The translations under genes were made by a program, and so were the position numbers. Of a DNA stretch of 64,000 nt, positions 24,977-35,607 are shown piece by piece. The stretch's first letter is position 1. The number at the start of each line of letters is the position of its first letter. The notes below the pieces were generated by a model. That model saw nothing but the letters and a program-made list of their open reading frames with translations. It made no database searches and was not told the DNA's origin. Origin of the DNA: Phaeosaccion multiseriatum (Eukaryota; Protista; Ochrophyta, other classes); the NCBI GenBank assembly GCA_965112735.1, contig OZ218950.1, positions 3,410,001 through 3,474,000 of the forward strand. The letters run 5' to 3'.

Positions 24977-27900
24977 CTACGCAAACATTCCTAGCCAGAA
25001 CTCTGGATTGGCCAGGTCGACCCCCCCCTCCCAGTCTCCGCTTCCTTCAGCCGTCGCCTCTTGTGCAGCACCAGCACCAACAGCACCACCAGCAGCACCA
25101 GCAGCACCAGCACCAGCACCAGCACCGCTTCCACCAACGCCATGGTGCTGCGGCTCCCCTGCTGCCGCCTTCACCATCTCCGCCTCCTCAGGCTCGGGCC
25201 GGCGGCTCTCAACCCCTCGATCATCACTTGCAGCAGGAGGAGGGCACTCTGGTGACTTTTGTTGACTTTTGTTTTTGTGCTTTCCTGAGGCGCTCGAGGC
25301 CAGCACTCCTCCCCTCTGTGCTACTCCCTTCACAGAGACTTCTCGAGGCATGCCTTCGAAGGCATGACTTCCCCCATCTCTATCATGCTGCTGCTGGTGC
25401 TGCTGCTGCTTCTGCTGCTTCTGCTGCTTCTGCTGCTGCTGGTGCTGCTTCTGCTGCTTCTGCTGCTGCTGCTTCTGCTGCTGCTGCTGCTGCTGCGGCT
25501 GCTTCTGCTTCTGCTTCTGCTGCTCGCTGTCCTGTCCATCCTGCTGCTGCTTCACTTGCAGCCTCTGCCGTTGCCACTCAATCAGCTCCTGATGCAGATC
25601 CCGCTGATCTTGTTCCTCCTCACGCCCCTCCTGCTGCCGCTCCTTCTCCCCTGCCGGCCTCCACCGCTCTGTTTTTCCTTGGCGCATCACCCCCTTATCC
25701 TCCTTTGCCCCCCCCCGCCCCTTTCTCTCCTCCCTCACCTCCGTATGCTCCTCCTCTTCCTTCTCCTTTCCCTTCTCCTCCCCCCCTTCCTCCTCGCCGT
25801 CGACCTTGTCTCTAACCTTTTGCCTCTTCCTCTTCAGTTGCTGCTGTCGTCTCCCCGTCTTCTCTCCCGTGGCCTTCTCCTCCTCCTCCTTCTCCTCTTC
25901 CTCCCCCGCTTCCTCCTCCACCTCCTCCCCCTCCTCTCCCTCCTCGTCCTTCCCCTCCTTCTCCTCCTTAAATTCGCTTCGCTTGCTACCCCTTTTTTGT
26001 TCGACAACTTTGTCAGCGTCTTCCTTCTCGTTCTCTTCCTCCTGTCTAGGACGCCCCTTAACCCCCCCTTTCTGTCGTGGCCTCTCTGTTTTCTCTTCCT
26101 GCCGCCTCCCGTCTCTTTTCGATCTATTTACCTGTTCCTCGCCCTCCGGAGGTTCTTTCATCTTCTCTTCCTTCTGCCGCTTGTTCTGATGTCGCATCTC
26201 CTCTCTCTCCTTGTTCTTGTTCTTGTTCTCGTTCTCCTCCTCTTCCTCCTCTCCCCTCCCCTCTCCTTCACGCCCTCTCTTCCTCCCCTCCCTCCTCTCC
26301 CTCTCACGGCTGCTAGGCGGCGGCAGAGAGTCCTCCCTCCTCCTTGTCTGACACGCGCTCGACATCGGTCTTTCATTCCTCTCGTCATGGTGATGGTCAT
26401 CCCAGCTCCTCCCACCCTCATACGACGCACGGTACTCACCACTGCTCCTCCAGTCCCACTTCTCTCTCCGGGACAGCAATGCAGGAGCCTCGAGGCCAGT
26501 ACCAGCACGAGCATCTACCCCACCCCTGCTGCTGCTTCTGCCCCCAAGACTGCTGTTGTATGACTGGCGCGCGGCTGGTGATCCCTCCCCTCCTACCCCT
26601 CGAAAAGAATTGCGTCCTACTTGCGTCGAAATGACCTTTATCAGGGCTTTCTTGTACTTATGATAAGTTGTCAGGCCTTTTCGCCTCTCCAGTGCAGCAA
26701 ACTCGGGGCTCTCCCACAGTCCCTCGACCGTCCTGCACGCTTGCTTCGCCAGGGCGATGAGCTTGGGGGGGTGTGTGGGGGGGTGGGTCAGGCGGAGAAG
26801 GCGCAAGAGAGAGAGAGGGAGGGAGAGGGAGGAGGCAAAAGAGAGAGAGGGAGGGAGAGGGAGAAGGCACAAGAGAGAGAGGGAGGAAGAGGGAGAAGGC
26901 GCAAAAGAGACACAGGGAGGAGGCGCAAAAGAGACAGAGGGAGGGACAAGAAGGCGCAAGAGAGAGAGAGAGAGGGAGGGAGAAGGCGGAAGAGAGAGAG
27001 AGGGAGGGAGAGTGAGAAAACGCAAAAGAGAGAGAGGGAGGGAGAGGGAGAAGGCACAAGGCGCGGTCAGGGCTAGGAGGAGAGGAGAATTTGGGAGCAG
27101 TGGTGATGGTGGATGGTGGACGTGGTGGTGATGGTGTTGATGATGGTGGTGATGTCATCACAGCACACAACATGAAAACCGAATACATGACGATTCTTTT
27201 GCACCACACTCAGCGTACATTACCTCCTTATGTTTGCTGTTGTAGGGCTCCAGATAGCTTCCGTCGAGCCTACTGGGGCGGAAGTAGAGAGACAAGATCC
27301 CAGCGTCGAGCAGCGCCTTCTCCAAGCGCAGGAACATGGTCTTTGCGGCGTGCATCCCCTCCTTGGGCAGCACGCAGAGAGTGGCGAAGATGCGGTCGAA
27401 GGCCTCTTGCTGGAGCCGCCTCGTGGTCTTGGTGAGCGGCTCCTTCGGGACTGGCGTCGTGGTTTTCCAGAATGCCTTCTCGCGCTCCACCAGGCTCTGT
27501 GTATGTGGGGGTGGTGGTGGGGGGGGGGGGCGTTTGTGGGGTAGCAAGGAGCACGGGGTTTTTTGTATGTGGTTCCGCCCCAGACAGGGGGGCAGCAGCA
27601 GCAGCAACAGGAGTGGTGGGAGAGAAGGAGGAGGAGGAGGAGGAGGAGGAGGAGGAGGAGGAGGAGGAGGAGGAGGAGGAGGAGGAGGAGGAGGAGGAGG
27701 AGGAGGAGGAGGAGGAGGAGGAGGAGGAGGAGGAGGAGGAGGAGGAGGAGGAGGAGGAGGAGGAGGAGGAGGAGGAGGAGGAGGAGGAGGAGGAGGAGGA
27801 GGAGGAGGAGGAGGAGGAGGAGGAGGAGGAGGAGGAGGAGGAGGAGGAGGAGGAGGAGGAGGAGGAGGAGGAGGAGGAGGAGGAGGAGGAGGAGGAGGAG

Positions 27901-28037
27901 GAGGAGGAGGAGGAGGAGGAGGAGGAGGAGCATGCGTTAGGTGGTCCTTCTTTCGAATCACCGCCGGAAAGATCCCCTACTGTCATATTATATATATATA
28001 TATATTATATATATATATATATTATATATTATATATA

Positions 28038-28079
<42 letters not shown>

Positions 28080-31000
28080 AGCGCCGCATCGCGACACATC
28101 CCTCGATCAGGCCGTTACTCCTCTGCAGCTGTATCACCCACTCTAGTGCTGCAGTATCTATACTCACCTCTATCATCTCCCGTCCGCGCAAACCGCCGAA
28201 CCTCCCAAGTTTCGCGCCCCCCTCCTCGTCCGTGGGAAAAGCTTTGCTGCTTCCCCCTCCTTCCTCTTTTCCTCCTCCTCCTTGCCCCCCTCCTGTTAGC
28301 TGAGGTACACTCCGTACGAAGTTCGCGCCCGGCACGATGACAGTCGAGGAGCCCCTCCCTACGGGGTTGGTATGACCGCCTGCCACTCCTGCCACTCCCG
28401 TCGCACCTGCCACACCTGCCGCCGCGCTGAAGAAGTGCGCGGGAGGAGCCATCGTCCTTGGCAAGGTCATTGAGCGGCGAGGAGACGGACTCCGAGAGGA
28501 GGAAGAGCGAGATGACACAGAGCAAGGGGAAAAGGCGGCTCGCGGCGAAGAAGAACAAGAAGAAGAGGGAGAAGGGGGGGATGAACGAGCCCAACCCTGC
28601 TGCTGCCGCTGCCGCTGCTGCTGCTGCTGTTGGTGCCGCTCCTGCTGTAGCTGGCGGTGCCGCAGCTGGTGGTGCCGCTGCTGCTGCTGGTGCTGTCGCT
28701 TCTCGTCCTCGCAGAGTGCTTCACTAGCTCTCGTGGGAGCCGCTCTGGCGACCGACGAAGAAGCCCCTGGAGACAGGGTGCCAGCAGTGTCCACGCTGCT
28801 GCTACTGCTTCTGGTAGTGGTGGCGACCGACGAAGAAGCCCCTGCAGACAGGGTGTCAGCAGTGTCCGCGCTGCTGCTACTGCTACTGGTAGTGGTGGCG
28901 ACCGACGAAGAAGCCCCTGGAGACAGGGTGTCAGCAGTGTCCACGCTGCTGCTACTACTACTGGTAGTGGTGGCGACCGACGAAGAATTCCCTGCAGACA
29001 GGGTGTCAGCAGCAGCAGCAGCGCGGACACTGCTACTGCTACTGGTCGTGGTGGTCGTGGTGGTCGTGTTGGTGGTACTGCTGGCTGGACTGGCGGGGCT
29101 CTGGCCAGTCTTGCGCTCAGCAAGGGCGGCGACGACCCTGGTGATGACGGACCCGAGAGCGCTTACAGAGGAAGAGAACGGAGAGTCGGGTTCGAAGCTG
29201 ATGTTTTGCGCCGCCACCTCAGCTCGCAGGCCCTCCACGGAGCCACAAGCGCCCCACAACAGCCTCGCCAGCTGTGATGAAAGGGAAGGGAAGTCAAGTA
29301 CCGCGCATAGTGCACAGCAGCAGGGTCGAGAAAGAATGAAGCAATGGAGGGAGTGAGTCCGTCAGTCGAGTGAGAGTCCATTCATTTCAAAGAGCGCTTA
29401 GCAAACGTGTGCCCTCGACACCCCTCTCTCGCGTCTCTCCCCTTCCCATCATCCCGCCTCTTCCGTCCGTCCGTTTACCTGGCGTCTGCGTGCACGGAAG
29501 GGCTCCAGTAGAGAAGGATCTGCGGGGCAGGGACGGAAGTACGTGAAGAGCAACTTCTTCCTAATGAAGAAGGATTTGAGACGCTGAAGGAGGCATCTTG
29601 CTGCGTTCTCTGGCCCGTCTGAAGGTCGAATATAAAGGGTTGCGAGGATGGCTCCAAACCTCTCGAGTTTGGCAGCCTTTATAGCCTTATTATCCAATGC
29701 CTGCGCTCTCCAATAGTTGGCCTCATCCGCCTTTATCGACTGCATATGCGCATGTACACCGCGTCAAAACAAGGACAGGGGGTTAAAGCCAAATTAGAAG
29801 AAAGTAGGTAAAAGTGCAAAAGCGGATGGAATAAAGCGAATGGCCCACGGGCCAAGGCACGAAACAAGCAGAGGGGCTGAGAGGCAACGACAAGGAAGGC
29901 CGCAAGGGAGAGAGGCTTGGCGACGACCGGAGCACTGCTCCTCAGTGCTCCTCTCACTCACAAGGCCCTGCTCCCCTCACTCACTCACTTGCTGCTCGGA
30001 GGGCGCCATGCAGAGCAACTGCATCCAAAGGAGCCCCTGCTCCTCAGCCTCTTGCACCCCCCCCCTCTTCCCCCTCTCGCCCCCAAGCCCGCCTATCTCC
30101 GGCTGCAAGTGCTCGGTGATGAAAGCCTTGGCAAGTCGTGCGTGTTTGTAAAAGTTCCAAAAGATTGGGGCCGCAGAGGTCCATTTCTCCAGCCCCTCAG
30201 AGTTATGGCACGCAAGAACCAGCAGTCGTGTGAGCTGTATGCCGTTCCGACCCATATGTACGAGGGGGTCGAGATAAGGCACCAGAGGGTAGGCCCAAGA
30301 TGGGCGAGGAAGAGCGCGCAACAACGAGGGAGGTTTCTCAGTGAAGAAATGAACAACACGCAGCGAGTCGAGGTGGGGGGGCGATACTGTCCCTCTGCCT
30401 CTGCCGAAGACAACAACACGCTTGATTTGATGTAAAGTAAGCAATCTCCCTCCGTTCCGGCTCACCTCTCTTGATCGTCTCTGGGACGCCAGCTCCAACC
30501 GCGAGGAACAGTCAGAGAACTGGAAGTAGGTAAAGAACAAGCGTTCCTCAACCAAGGCCACCTTGAGTCGGTGAAAGAGACGGTCTGCGGCGTGCGCGGC
30601 ACCGTCCGAACGGTGCACCCGCAGCGTCGCAGCGATACGACTGTAAGCGGCTTCCTTGGCGAGCTTGATTGCGCGCGTCTGAACGGACACGCCTTCAGGC
30701 ATTGGGATCGCCTCCCAATGACTGTCTTCTTGTGGCTTTATGAACTTTTAGCAAGGGGAGAGGGCGGGAGGGCGGGGTGGGGGGGGGGTTGATGCTAAAC
30801 GTGAGGCCCTTCTCACTACCAACACAACACTCCAGCCCTTACTTACTTCTTGCAGGAAGGGCTTTAAGAAGAACGCGGCCTCACTTTCATCGCCCTTCAT
30901 CTCGTCCTCGTCATTCGCTTTGATTTTATGTGTCTCCTTCCTTTCTGCCTCGTCCTGCTTCTGCCCCGGCTCCACCTGAGGCCGATTCATAGCCGCCACA

Positions 31001-31813
31001 TCCGCGGGTACTTCCCCCGCTTCCCGCACCTCCCCCCTTTCCCCTTCCTCACACACCCCCTTCTTATCCTGCAGCCCCCCCTGTTGTCGTTGCTGCTGCT
31101 GCTGCTGCTGCTGCTGTTGCTGTTTCTGCTCTTCCTCTTGAACACACCCTTCCTTCTTATCGCTCTCTCGCTCCGCGTCCTCCCCTGTGAACCCCCTCTC
31201 CTCAAAGTGGCGGAAAACGATGGGCTTCATTGCCTCTCTGTAAGCGTAGAAATCCCCCTCGCAATGCTTGAGTTGAAGCTTGAGCTCCTCTTGCAGTCCG
31301 TTGACGGGCTTGCACGCGTTCCACACCAGACGCACGAGCTCGCGATGGCGGCCAGGAAGAGGCTCCAAGCGGTGTGGATCGTCTCGGCTGGATCTAAAAT
31401 AGTCAAAGAGCATTCTGTGCTCCACCAAGGCGGAATACAGCCGCTCACACAACCGGGCCACAGCCAGCAGTGGTCCATCCGAGGGTAGAATCGTGAGGGC
31501 CCACTCGACTCTCCTGGCAGCGAGGGCCTCCTCACACTTCCTGGTAACAGTGGGTTTCCTCCTGGCAAGCACGAGCGAGAGGTCCCCCTTTACTTGTATT
31601 CGAATGTCATCTTTTGCTGGTGCTGTCATCTTGACTTCTCCCTCTTCCTCGTCCGACTCGTCCTCCTCCTCCCCCCCATCCCGCCTCGCCATCGCCAACT
31701 CCTCCCAATGGATAGTATTTTCACCTTCGCTGTAGTATCTCCGTAAACACACGATGTGTGTGTGTGTTGTGTGTATGTGTTGGATTGTTTTACCGAATCA
31801 TCATCATCATCAT
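24977..31813 (-). CDS. Large orphan protein (~1600 aa) with four copies of an unrecognised ~130-aa domain separated by low-complexity linkers; exons ~31738-30847, 30744-30466, 30234-29989, 29739-29479, 29271-28168, 27496-27224, 26761-24977 (start either 31813 via a mini-exon or ATG 31692)
   Basis: All six junctions between these exons are phase-0 GT-AG and keep frame. The four units share W...L.[VI].(P)[SK][DE]G......RL......YF.....LE.....[EQ]L..L...AC....GL. Confidence 0.7.
27627..27930. repeat. (GAG)n ~100-unit microsatellite, followed by an AT-only (TA)n tract at ~27984-28076; both intronic
   Basis: Runs seen directly. Confidence 0.95.
28746..29045 (-). repeat. Coding minisatellite: four 75-bp units (25-aa SSSSSSVDTADTLSPGASSSVATTT)
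   Basis: TGGCGACCGACGAAGAA recurs at 28746, 28821, 28896 and 28971. Confidence 0.9.
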
Positions 31814-32246: not shown

Positions 32247-33245
32247 CTACCCGTCGTCGTCTTCGTCCTTGCACTTGGCGAGGTCCTCCGGCAAGGGAAG
32301 CTTCCGTAGCTTGTCCCTGAAATCCTGTGCAGAGCTTTCACTCACCGCACTCTGCAGAAGGGGGGGGGGGAGGGAGTGGACGGAGAAGGGGGTACAGCGT
32401 GTCAATGCTTCCGCCAGGTCCTCACTACGCAACGCAGGGCTTAGCAAGGCAACAGCAAGGAGCATGAATGAGAAGGGAGGCCTGGGGCGGGGGAGGGAAG
32501 GTATGAGGCACATGGTATCTCTGCCCTCGAACCATTCCCCGTCGTCACTACTGTCACTGACCTGTACACCCACAAAGTTGACGACTTTTCCCGTCTCGTC
32601 CAGCAGAGGGGCCACAAAGAACTGATTCCAAAAGGGTACGCCATCGGCCTGACAGGAGAGGAGAGGGGAGCCGCATACCGAGTGAGGTGGGTGGATGCGT
32701 GGGTGGGTGTATGTGTGTGTGGGGGGGGGTAAGTTGGTCAAATGCATACTACTTGTTTCGCTCCAACCTCTTTGGGACACGAGAGACTTCAAAGGACGGG
32801 GAGAAGGAGGGGGGAGAAGGAGGGGGCGATGGCGCACCCCGCCGCGCTACACGCAGGCGAAGCTCCATCTCCACCCTCCACTCTCCACTCTCCACCCTGT
32901 TCCTCTAACCTTGTAGTTGAGGAGGCAGACAGACGTGTCCCTGGCATCGGCCACTCCCTGGCGGATAATGTCCACAGCTCGCTGATCCGTCCCGGGGCCC
33001 TGCAAGACAGCAAGGAAAGACAAGGGAGAGAGAGAAAGAGAGAGTTCAAAGCCGGGGAAGGATGGAAAGAAGAATTACGGGAGGGATGGAAAGAAAGAAC
33101 TACGTTCCGCATGCATTCCTTCTCGCACCCACTTCTGCCGAGCGCCAGCCCAATCCCTCCCTCCTGTTCTGTACTCCTCCAGTGCTACTCGCCCTCTCTT
33201 CTGTCTCTCCCTCCCTCTCCGCGCTCCTCGGCCCCTTGCTCCCCC

Positions 33246-33276
<31 letters not shown>

Positions 33277-35607
33277 ACACACACCCCTACACCCACCCCT
33301 CTCACCTGCAAAAAGCGACAATTCCGTCCAATGACCTTATCCACGGTATAGCCTGTCAGATCCAAAAAGCCTTGAGAGGCATACACGATTGGGTTGTCTG
33401 GCAGACTCGGGTCCGAAACCGTAAAGTTTTGCTGACTCTTCATGAGGGCGTGGAACAGCTGGAAGTCCGGCTCCAGCAGCAACCTCTTGGGCTGCGATCC
33501 TCCTCCGCCTTCTCCTCCCCCGCCATCAGCTTCCCCCCCCGCCTCCCTGGCTAGCTCCTGCTTTGCCCGCTCCACTTGCCCGCTGATGTCCAGTGCATCT
33601 TCGTTGATACACTTGCCCAGAATGTCGGGCGCCACCGTTGCCATGTTCTCCTGATAAGCGGCAGTGTGTGTGTGTGTGTGTGGGGGGGGGGGGGTGCACG
33701 GAGGACGGACGGGAGGGCAGCCGGGGACAGCAGGGAGCAATGATAGTTACGGGGGGGGAGGACAGAGGAGCGGTTACGCATGACACGCGCAAACACGCGT
33801 CTTGCCAAAGTATTTCCTACTGCATATGCATTGCAATGATGAGGAAAGGTGGTCCGCCCTGTCCCTTGCGCTGCGGATGAAAGTCAAGTCAAGTGAAGGG
33901 CCCCACCTTGACGCAAGAGCGGAGGTTCATGTTCTCCTTCCGGAGCATAAGCAGCTGCTCCTGCAGACACTCGAGCATAAACTTCTTGCGGATGCGCGAC
34001 CGTTTCGCGTGCTCTCGGTTCCGTTCCTGCGGTGCGTTAACACGACCGAAGCGGAGGGAGCGGGGGGGGGGGGGGGAAGCAGATGCGTTGGTGCGAAGAG
34101 ATAATGAACATGATCATCTCGCAATCTCTTAACGTCGCCCCTCAAACTCGCCAGTCCCATCCCATCTATGAGCCTGCTTGACGTTTCCATCCGACGTACG
34201 TCTCCCTCTCTAAGGACCTCCCCTGCATAGCATTCGAGCAACAACCCAAGGGCTACACAAGAGAGAGTGTGTGTGTGTGTGTGTGCAAGGAGCTTTGCTT
34301 CCATGCCCCTCAAAGAAAGACAAAAGCCACACACCATACACACCCTCGAGACACACACACACACAAGTATGTTTCGAGGACATTTTGACGACATTCGTAC
34401 ACAATTCTGAATGTCCACCAGTGCGCGGCGTGACCATGGCCCATCCAGCAGCTTCCCCTCGCCCCTCTCCCGCTCACTCACCCGTCTCTCCTGCTTTTGC
34501 TCCTCTGTCATCTCCTTCTTGCTCTCTGGTGGAGCCTTCCTTTTCCTCTCCATCATGGCAGCTACCTCTGCAGCCACCTCCTCCTTGGTTATGTCCCCCC
34601 CCCCTGACGCCGCCGCCATGTTCCCCAGTCCGCCCCTCCCCCCCGCGGGTGTCGGTATCTGCGGCTCACTTATCCCCATCATACCCCCCATCCCGAAAGA
34701 GGTGCCCAACGCGAGCTTCCCCGCTCCTGCACCCCCCATCAGCGCACCAAACGCCCCCAGGTCCTGCCCCCCCAGGTCCTGCGTAGCCGCTGCGTCACCC
34801 TCTTGTGCAGGAGCAGGCGGCAGGGGTTGAGTGGTCGCGGAGGCGCCCTCCTCGCCCTCTATTGTTGGCGCAGCTGACATCACTGCTTCTTCCTCTTCTC
34901 CTCCTCCTTCTCCTCCCCCTTCTCCTCCTCCTGCCCCCTCTGCCTCTGCTGCAGTAGTGTCCACGCCTGCGGTCAACAGCGCAAGATCAGCAAAAGAGTG
35001 TACTTTCGTCGCCGTTCTTGCCGCTTCCGCTCCCTCAGCCAGCGGAGCCGGCTCCATAAAGCCGTCTTCGTTGTTATCTCCATCGATTGTGAAGAAGCAG
35101 TCTAGAGTGTGAGAGAACAGACAGTTGCACGCATCGAGAGCAAATACAAGGAGAGGGAAAATAAGTGCGAGGCCAGAGTCAGGTCGCGACCAAAGCAACA
35201 GTGAACATCTTTCTGGGGAGAGGATGGCTGTCGCAGGATTCCTGGTCCACAGGTAAGCCACGAACAGGCAGTCAACAGAGTAAAGAGGCACGCGCGGCAC
35301 ACACATAGGAGCCCTCCTCCCGCCCCCCCCCCCCCCCCCACCCACCCCCGTCCCGCCGCGAAAGTAACCCGGTTCTCCACACGCACCTGAGAACATTTCA
35401 TCCAGGTCCACTGTCAAAAGTGCGGCAATGGACGGGAGCGGCGGCGGGCGGGCAGGTTAGAGCACAATGAGCACGTACTCTTTGGGAAGGACCAACGTAA
35501 GCGGAGCATGAACAGCAAGCAGGAAGAAACAACAAAACCGGCACACCGCTCTTACATTGGCCGTTCCCGTTCCCCGCCGACCCAAACACAGGCGCAACCA
35601 TATCCAT
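32247..35607 (-). CDS. AUREO: Aureochrome (bZIP + LOV blue-light-family transcription factor), about 8 exons
   Basis: N-terminal LDLDEMFSDCFF. bZIP: [31 protein letters not shown]: [37 protein letters not shown]|GPGTD..LLNYK|[17 protein letters not shown]. Confidence 0.96.

What the first reader, a model, noticed from the sequence alone, without database searches (positions are those of the whole stretch)
24977..31813. Orphan ~1600-aa protein built from four copies of an unrecognised domain, hidden by introns
Seen in sequence after manual splicing. Unit A: ..LTILPSDGPLLAVARLCERLYSALVEHRMLFDYFRSSRDDPHRLEPLPGRHRELVRLVWNACKPVNGL. Unit B: ATLRVHRSDGAAHAADRLFHRLKVALVEERLFFTYFQFSDCSSRLELASQRRSRE|LTRLLVLACHNSEGL. 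Unit C: ATLYIRPSDGPENAARCLLQRLKSFFIRKKLLFTYFRPCPADPSLLEPFRARRRQ|LARLLWGACGSVEGL. Unit D: ATLCVLPKEGMHAAKTMFLRLEKALLDAGILSLYFRPSRLDGSYLEPYNSKHKE|LIALAKQACRTVEGL. Each unit is preceded by an E-x(3-4)-W motif and followed by an amphipathic helix. Invariant W, G, RL, YF, LE, AC and GL against heavily diverged DNA suggest purifying selection on a folded, mainly helical domain. I recognise no family. The linkers are E/Q-, S/T- and K/E/R-rich. Inference: a multivalent, possibly nucleic-acid-binding or scaffold protein, directly downstream of and co-oriented with aureochrome.
Basis: partly seen in the sequence, partly recalled or inferred. Interest (0 to 1): 0.85.

Follow-up and report, generated by a model that had tools for sequence, protein, structure and literature searches.

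The report
Four capsid-like modules in algal gene
A real, spliced, about 1,616-codon gene of an unidentified brown-lineage alga carries four diverged copies of a small helical domain that no database recognises. Two independent but modest tests suggest the domain descends from the capsid part (C-terminal half) of a jumping gene's Gag protein, as the vertebrate SCAN domain does.

Summary
An 8-exon model (31813 to 24977, 1,616 codons, 7 GT..AG introns, six of them phase 0) has no in-frame stop.

"Unrecognised" holds at the level of standard searches. Pfam, PDB sequences, 1.84 billion representatives, 5.8 billion clusters, Foldseek and the Atlas gave nothing. But this genome has no close relative in those databases, and the scan has reported several other orphan repeat proteins in it.

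New here:
- The unit also aligns to the matching stretch of Gag in a resident Ty3/gypsy family (BLASTP E 7e-4; hhalign score 27-32, against at most 22 in 758 controls).

I read it, at about 55%, as a co-opted capsid-CTD module repeated four times on disordered charged linkers, probably an association scaffold. No RNA data could be obtained.

The parts
31794..31813 (-). Inferred exon 1: ATG x5 then ATTCG, 20 nt, followed by a GTAAAA donor. It is needed to bring the E-x4-W motif of unit A into the reading frame.
   Evidence: Sequence; frame and junctions. Inferred only; there is no RNA evidence.
30847..31729 (-). Exon 2. It holds the E-x4-W motif, an acidic insert, the complete uninterrupted unit A (core 31186-31560) and an E/Q-rich acidic linker.
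   Evidence: AlphaFold gives the core pLDDT 85-91.
30466..30744 (-). Exon 3: unit B, first piece (E-x3-W, pre-helix, 'TL.V..SDG..RL..YF..LE').
29989..30234 (-). Exon 4: unit B, second piece ('L..L..AC...EGL' plus the last helix) and a short linker.
29479..29739 (-). Exon 5: unit C, first piece.
28168..29271 (-). Exon 6: unit C, second piece, then a 312-aa Ser/Thr/Ala/Gly- and Gln/His-rich linker. The linker holds a 75-bp tandem repeat (28746-29012, 3.6 copies, 94% matches).
27224..27496 (-). Exon 7: unit D, first piece.
24977..26761 (-). Exon 8: unit D, second piece, then a 543-aa E/G/Q/R/K-rich tail with basic clusters (for example KRKR), and the TAG stop at 24977-24979. Further introns inside the tail cannot be excluded.
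27497..28167 (-). Intron 6 (671 nt). It holds a (GAG)103 microsatellite (27622-27930 on the + strand) and an (AT)49 run (27985-28076).

Best explanation
This is a genuine, single-copy, spliced nuclear gene. Its product strings four diverged copies (32-40% identical) of a folded module of about 110-125 residues on long disordered linkers, and ends in a charged tail of about 540 residues with NLS-like basic clusters.

The module is made of a helix, a helix, a small beta-hairpin and three more helices. It is most likely a descendant of the C-terminal domain of the capsid (CA-CTD) of a Ty3/gypsy retrotransposon Gag protein. I think it was co-opted by the host long ago and then multiplied as a two-exon cassette.

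CA-CTD and its vertebrate derivative SCAN work as association (dimer or lattice) modules. By analogy, the protein would act as a multivalent scaffold. Each module would pair with a like module, either its own kind or the Gag of resident elements, and the linkers would let it bridge or cluster partners, probably in the nucleus.

Shown here: the gene structure in sequence, the repeat, the constraint on the protein, the absence of standard database relatives, the fold prediction, and the targeted similarity to Gag.

Inferred: the splicing, the descent from Gag, the self-association, the nuclear location, and any cellular role.
For: Gene and repeat:
- The exact strings are found and the 8-exon open model holds.
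- The genome holds only these four copies.
- The exons have a coding-like GC pattern by codon position that the five non-repeat introns lack.
- The invariant residues are encoded by varied codons while third positions are saturated.

Fold:
- Two AlphaFold models were made. The core of the second has pLDDT 85-91.
- In a search of 48,161 PDB chain representatives, the only matches that span the whole module are capsid CTDs:

Sequence, tested because of the fold lead:
- Unit profile against the Gag part of a resident Ty3/gypsy gag-pol frame (L011): hhalign score 31.9, E 7.7e-4, at Gag residues 262-316.
- A second, 30%-identical family (L010) aligns at the same place, but its score is not significant.
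- Unit profile against the Gag alignment: score 27.3, 66 columns.
- BLASTP of the uninterrupted unit A against L011 Gag: 29% identity over 68 residues, E 7e-4, in the same register.
- Controls, none above 22.1: 301 column-permuted alignments (max 19.8), 66 other real segments (max 20.0), 119 other open frames of the window (max 17.1), and 272 segments of 12 other retroelement loci (max 22.1).
- The matched Gag stretch lies in the second half of the region between the N-terminus and the CCHC knuckle, which is where a CA-CTD sits.
- The first-exon piece alone is not significant, yet it lands in the same register.

Precedent: SCAN is held to derive from retrotransposon gag, and CA HMMs do not detect SCAN (PMC11011659). 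That shows such descendants escape HMM searches.
Against: - No Pfam Gag family matches the units or even the resident Gags. That the matched Gag stretch is CA-CTD therefore rests on its position alone.
- Most of the sequence signal sits in one 20-column motif, L..L..AC....GL.
- The similarity is significant only as a targeted test. Genome-wide searches with the unit did not list Gag at E <= 10. Over all ~460 real segments later scanned, the expected number of hits at that P-value is about 0.1.
- Gag regions of 12 other retroelement loci gave nothing.
- The module has a beta-hairpin and a leading helix. To my knowledge, classical CA-CTDs lack both.
- Self-association is untested; the complex prediction gave no answer.
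- There is no RNA evidence for any junction.
Confidence: 0.5

Rival explanations
1. A lineage-restricted helical domain with no relation to Gag. On this reading the capsid-like fold matches reflect a common small helical arrangement, and the Gag alignment is a chance match centred on one short motif. The function would be an unknown protein- or nucleic-acid-binding repeat in a disordered scaffold protein.
For: - There are zero hits in 1.84 billion representatives, in Pfam and in PDB sequences.
- All fold scores are under the noise bar.
- The signal is concentrated in 20 columns.
- Twelve other retroelement loci do not match.
- The same genome holds many other orphan repeat proteins.
Against: - Two independent kinds of evidence point to the same domain of the same protein class.
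- The Gag match exceeds all 758 controls by about 9 score units or more.
- BLASTP with composition adjustment gives E 7e-4 over 68 residues spanning both halves of the unit.
Confidence: 0.32
2. A DNA-binding helical module of the BEN or helix-turn-helix kind, repeated four times as in BEND3-like chromatin proteins. The protein would read DNA directly.
For: - A Tc3-type HTH Pfam model touches the 'AC...GL' turn of unit A at E 0.026.
- All four units are basic, pI 9-10.3.
- The tail has NLS-like clusters.
Against: - The BEN match has 4% identity and ranks below the capsid matches.
- No Pfam BEN hit appears at E <= 10 for any unit.
- The HTH hit is below the cut-off and is seen in one unit of four.
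Confidence: 0.08
3. The model is wrong in kind. It could be two or more genes, a pseudogene, or an untranslated region whose open frames are kept open by low-complexity repeats.
For: - No RNA evidence could be obtained.
- The first 20-nt exon and the long low-complexity tail are inferred.
- Several introns have lengths divisible by three, and at least one stays open in frame.
Against: - Amino-acid conservation persists with saturated synonymous sites across four units.
- Intron positions are the same in three units, and their removal reproduces the uninterrupted unit A.
- There is no in-frame stop in 1,616 codons.
- The GC pattern by codon position is coding-like.
Confidence: 0.05

Closest known systems
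SCAN domain of vertebrate zinc-finger proteins (a Gag capsid C-terminal domain co-opted as a dimerisation module)
   Same: Both are small helical modules thought to descend from the CA-CTD of a Ty3/gypsy-type Gag. Both are used by a host protein without the rest of Gag, and neither is detectable with capsid HMMs (PMC11011659; here).
   Different: SCAN occurs once, at the N-terminus of zinc-finger transcription factors of vertebrates. Here there are four tandem copies, no zinc fingers, long disordered linkers, and an algal host. No Pfam SCAN match was found, and dimerisation was not shown.
Retroviral and retrotransposon capsid C-terminal domains (MLV, HTLV-1, RSV, HIV-1 CA; Copia capsid; Arc C-lobe)
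   Same: They are the best whole-domain fold matches of both models. The helix order is compatible. The unit also shows sequence similarity to the equivalent stretch of a resident Ty3/gypsy Gag.
Gag-derived host genes that act on retroelements (mouse Fv1; Ty1 p22, a CA-CTD fragment that limits Ty1). These are cited from general knowledge, not from a paper read here.
   Same: A host-encoded capsid-derived module sits beside apparently active elements of a related Gag type. The L010 family copies are 95-100% alike with intact frames.
   Different: No evidence of interaction was obtained, identity to present-day Gag is only about 20-29%, and the four-fold tandem form is not known for these factors.
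Co-opted gag genes catalogued across eukaryotes (Wang and Han 2021, PMC8321522)
   Same: The same kind of event: an LTR-retrotransposon gag piece recruited as a host gene.
   Different: That survey lists 14 events, all in animals, plants or fungi, and none in stramenopile algae (abstract). The cases named here (Arc, PNMA, PEG10) keep a recognisable gag rather than an internally repeated CTD alone.

Membership tests
Retroelement capsid C-terminal domain (CA-CTD) superfamily, including SCAN-like derivatives | Compact helical CTD fold that superposes on solved capsid CTDs. | tested here: inconclusive
Retroelement capsid C-terminal domain (CA-CTD) superfamily, including SCAN-like derivatives | Sequence relationship to a Gag protein, at the CA-CTD position. 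| tested here: met
   - hhalign against L011 Gag residues 262-316: score 31.9, E 7.7e-4.
- hhalign against the Gag alignment: score 27.3.
- BLASTP of unit A: 29% identity over 68 residues, E 7e-4.
- 758 controls score at most 22.1.

Caveats: this is a targeted test only, and one Gag lineage out of about ten tried. That the stretch is CA-CTD rests on its position before the CCHC knuckle.
Retroelement capsid C-terminal domain (CA-CTD) superfamily, including SCAN-like derivatives | Major homology region signature at the start of the CTD. | tested here: inconclusive
   All four units keep 'G ... R-L' at constant spacing after a short strand. This resembles the G...R-[FL] core of the signature as I recall it. 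The conserved Gln and Glu of the signature are not kept. The consensus comes from memory, with no tool comparison.
Retroelement capsid C-terminal domain (CA-CTD) superfamily, including SCAN-like derivatives | Match to a curated Gag or capsid profile (Pfam Gag_p30, Retrotrans_gag, Gag_p24, SCAN). | tested here: not met
   No such family appears at E <= 10 for any unit piece. Gag_p30 and Retrotrans_gag match nowhere in the genome, not even in the resident gag-pol frames.
Retroelement capsid C-terminal domain (CA-CTD) superfamily, including SCAN-like derivatives | Self-association (dimer or lattice contacts). | not testable with these tools
   The one complex prediction gave 'no answer', which counts neither for nor against.
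BEN domain (PF10523) | Match to the BEN profile and fold. | tested here: not met
Helix-turn-helix, Tc3-transposase type (PF21517) | Profile match above the curated cut-off in the units. | tested here: not met
   15 bits against a cut-off of 27.2, E 0.026, in unit A only.

The most novel reading that the evidence does not exclude
The gene is the first gag-derived host gene seen in a stramenopile alga, in a form not described before: four capsid-CTD modules in tandem. It would act as a multivalent decoy that binds the Gag of the resident, apparently active Ty3/gypsy elements and disturbs particle assembly. That would be a host-encoded copy-number control, like Fv1 or Ty1 p22 but built by internal repetition.
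Probability: 0.15. Interest if true: 0.8.

Novelty: new variant of a known kind. Interest (0 to 1): 0.5.

Why it matters
If the descent from Gag holds, this extends capsid co-option to a major algal lineage. It has so far been catalogued only in animals, plants and fungi (PMC8321522). It would also show a new way of using the module, as a four-fold tandem array on disordered linkers.

The claim is directly testable: does a unit dimerise, and does it bind the Gag of the elements still moving in the same genome?

If the descent does not hold, the gene is one more constrained orphan repeat protein in a genome that has no sequenced close relatives. That would be of modest interest.

Tried and rejected
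- Pfam on all exon frames and on every unit piece: no consistent family.
- Profile of the four units against 1.84 billion representatives: 0 hits at E <= 0.001.
- Word-indexed search of the exon-2 frame: 0 hits.
- PDB sequence search: only a ferredoxin-like complex I subunit at E 0.054, rejected as chance.
- ESM Atlas by features and by shape: nothing usable.
- Foldseek against PDB and viral models: nothing at E <= 0.001.
- Metagenome scan: the alignment was too diverged to use. The single-protein scan gave one hit, which is a pattern match in a non-coding frame of a high-GC bacterial contig, opposite an Smr-type ORF, and was rejected.
- EF-hand reading of the 'SDG' and 'YF...LEP' loops: not supported by Pfam or by the model.
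- The resident Gag region has no relatives in the 5.8-billion database and no PDB or Pfam link.
- Twelve other retroelement loci: no match to the unit.
- L021 is a decayed Gag fragment, not a second host gene.
- Complex prediction of two copies of unit A: 'no answer', so it is no evidence either way.
- The bacterial promoter/terminator scan is irrelevant to a eukaryote.
- A spliced, joined protein was never sent to any search or fold. Exon pieces were given as separate rows by reference. Scripts summed exon lengths and counted in-frame stops. alone also concatenated the exons in memory for a stop count. It printed and saved nothing joined.
Full report
**1. Is it there?**

Unit A (31294-31497) is uninterrupted. 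Units B, C and D are each split once.

The split falls at the same point in all three units, between the basic '..R-x-[EQ]' and 'L-x-[RA]-L'. The intervening 231, 207 and 462 nt begin with GT and end with AG. Removing them reproduces the order seen uninterrupted in unit A. That is internal support for the splicing, though not proof.

A full model has eight exons:
- 31813-31794
- 31729-30847
- 30744-30466
- 30234-29989
- 29739-29479
- 29271-28168
- 27496-27224
- 26761-24980, followed by TAG

It has 1,616 codons, no in-frame stop and seven GT..AG introns. Introns 2-7 are phase 0. This agrees with the sibling note s1-363053.

The 20-nt first exon is an inference. The 'E-x4-W' motif of unit A lies upstream of the first in-frame ATG of exon 2, and it is homologous to the motif that opens units B-D.

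I did not send a joined protein to any search or fold. Exon pieces were always given as separate references or rows. Scripts summed exon lengths and counted in-frame stops. alone also joined the exons in memory for a stop count. Nothing joined was printed or saved.

**2. Is it more than chance, and is it coding?**

- The genome (67 Mb, 22 contigs) holds only these four copies. This holds for the single sequence and for the profile at E <= 10.
- The exons show high GC1, low GC2 and high GC3, like the neighbouring aureochrome exon. Five of the six introns checked do not. The exception is intron 6, whose pattern comes from its GAG repeat.
- Between units, identity at third codon positions is 0.32-0.38, which is saturated. 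At positions 1 and 2 it is 0.38-0.62.
- Thirteen of the 16 invariant residues use more than one codon. The invariant Arg uses all four CGN codons.

So the protein sequence has been held by selection since the duplications.

**3. Standard searches**

The following found nothing:
- Pfam on every exon frame and unit piece
- PDB sequences
- A profile search of 1.84 billion representatives
- The word-indexed 5.8-billion database
- Foldseek on PDB and BFVD
- The ESM Atlas

The one metagenome hit is a chance pattern in a bacterial contig.

This blank must be read with care. The LOV exon of the aureochrome next door finds nothing closer than 50% identity (Tribonema, brown algae). The genome therefore has no close relative in these collections. 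The scan has also reported several other orphan repeat proteins in this same genome.

**4. Fold**

Two AlphaFold models of unit A were made, with the other units' exon pieces as alignment rows.
- The 107-residue model has pLDDT 76.
- In the 186-residue model the core (residues 57-150) has pLDDT 85-91. It consists of a helix, a long helix, a short beta-hairpin ('..YF' and 'LEP') and two further helices. A last helix is less certain.

In an exhaustive structural comparison with 48,161 PDB representatives, nearly all rows cover only the first helical hairpin. The matches that span the whole module are capsid C-terminal domains:

**5. Test of the hypothesis with sequences from the same genome**

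Pfam's Gag models match nowhere in the genome. Integrase does, however, and it led to two Ty3/gypsy families. Each has a single long gag-pol frame containing RT, RNase H and integrase. L010 also has a weak, below-cut-off chromodomain match.

In both families the region before the protease holds a CCHC knuckle. It lies at about residue 445 in L011 and about residue 375 in L010.

Results of the comparison:
- The unit profile aligns to L011 Gag residues 262-316 with hhalign score 31.9 and E 7.7e-4.
- It aligns to the equivalent place in L010 with a non-significant score of 15.
- It aligns to an alignment of both Gags with score 27.3, over 66 columns running from 'TL.V.PSDG' to 'AC..V.GL'.
- BLASTP of the uninterrupted unit A against the L011 stretch gives 29% identity over 68 residues and E 7e-4, in the same register.

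Controls (all scoring at most 22.1):

| Control set | n | Maximum score |
|---|---|---|
| Column-permuted alignments | 301 | 19.8 |
| Other real segments (rest of both polyproteins, 40 aureochromes) | 66 | 20.0 |
| Other open frames of this window | 119 | 17.1 |
| Segments from 12 further retroelement loci | 272 | 22.1 |

The matched stretch lies in the second half of the part of Gag that precedes the knuckle, where a CA-CTD belongs.

Weak points:
- Most of the score comes from 20 columns, 'L..L..AC....GL'.
- The first-exon piece alone is not significant, though it falls in the same register.
- The resident Gag itself has no detectable link to known capsid families.
- A blind genome-wide search would not have found the match.
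- Only one Gag lineage of about ten matches.

**6. Reading**

Two independent kinds of evidence, each modest, point to the same domain of the same protein class. I put the descent from a Gag CA-CTD at about 55-60%.

The precedent is the vertebrate SCAN domain. It is held to derive from a retrotransposon gag, and capsid HMMs cannot see it (PMC11011659). A survey of gag co-option found 14 events, all in animals, plants or fungi (PMC8321522).

For function I infer the following, without test. The four modules would be association units on disordered linkers: an acidic E/Q linker, a 312-residue Ser/Thr/Ala/Gly linker with a 75-bp repeat, and a 543-residue E/G/Q/R/K tail with KRKR-type clusters. 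The units are basic (pI 9-10.3), so nucleic-acid contact is possible.

A bolder reading is that the protein binds the Gag of resident elements. The L010 family looks active, with copies 95-100% alike and intact frames. That reading remains speculative.

**7. What could not be done**

- The complex prediction gave no answer.
- No profile library was available for an HHpred-type search.

**8. Verdict**

"Unrecognised" is true for routine tools, but the domain probably has kin in retrotransposon capsids. I classify it as a new variant of a known kind (gag co-option, SCAN-like), with moderate interest and moderate confidence.

Noticed in passing
window 27622-27930 and 27985-28076: A nearly perfect (GAG)103 trinucleotide run (99% matches) and an (AT)49 run lie side by side inside intron 6 of the gene. 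On the coding strand they read as a long CTC run followed by a TA run.
   Followed up: no
window 28746-29012: A 75-bp tandem repeat (3.6 copies, 94% matches) inside exon 6 encodes a 25-residue Ser/Thr-rich repeat of the C-D linker. It is much younger than the four domain units.
   Followed up: partly
window 26794-27060: A GA-rich 32-nt repeat array (8.4 copies) fills most of intron 7. It reads as a CT-rich tract on the coding strand, just before the acceptor.
   Followed up: no
window 32247-33740 (minus strand): The aureochrome-type bZIP-LOV gene immediately upstream has as its best database relative Tribonema minus aureochrome 4, at only 50% identity. So the genome has no close relative in the protein collections. 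Whether it and the repeat gene are separate transcripts is untested.
   Followed up: partly
L010 (G000:C10:824500-833500) and L015-L020: A Ty3/gypsy family with an intact 2,056-aa gag-pol frame has at least six copies whose Gag stretch is 95-100% identical, so it looks recently active. Its Gag matches no Pfam Gag model. The genome holds at least 85 RT-RNaseH matches in several score classes, and 30 copia-type RT matches.
   Followed up: partly
L021 (G000:C4:3596763-3599921): A decayed, rearranged fragment of the L010-type Gag: two partial copies of the 'AC...GL' stretch on opposite strands.
   Followed up: partly
L023, L024, L025 (3' parts, near RT-RNaseH): Three other gypsy families give long (70-column) but non-significant hhalign alignments to the unit profile (score about 18) in their RT-RNaseH region. 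This is probably one shared helical stretch. It was not pursued.
   Followed up: no
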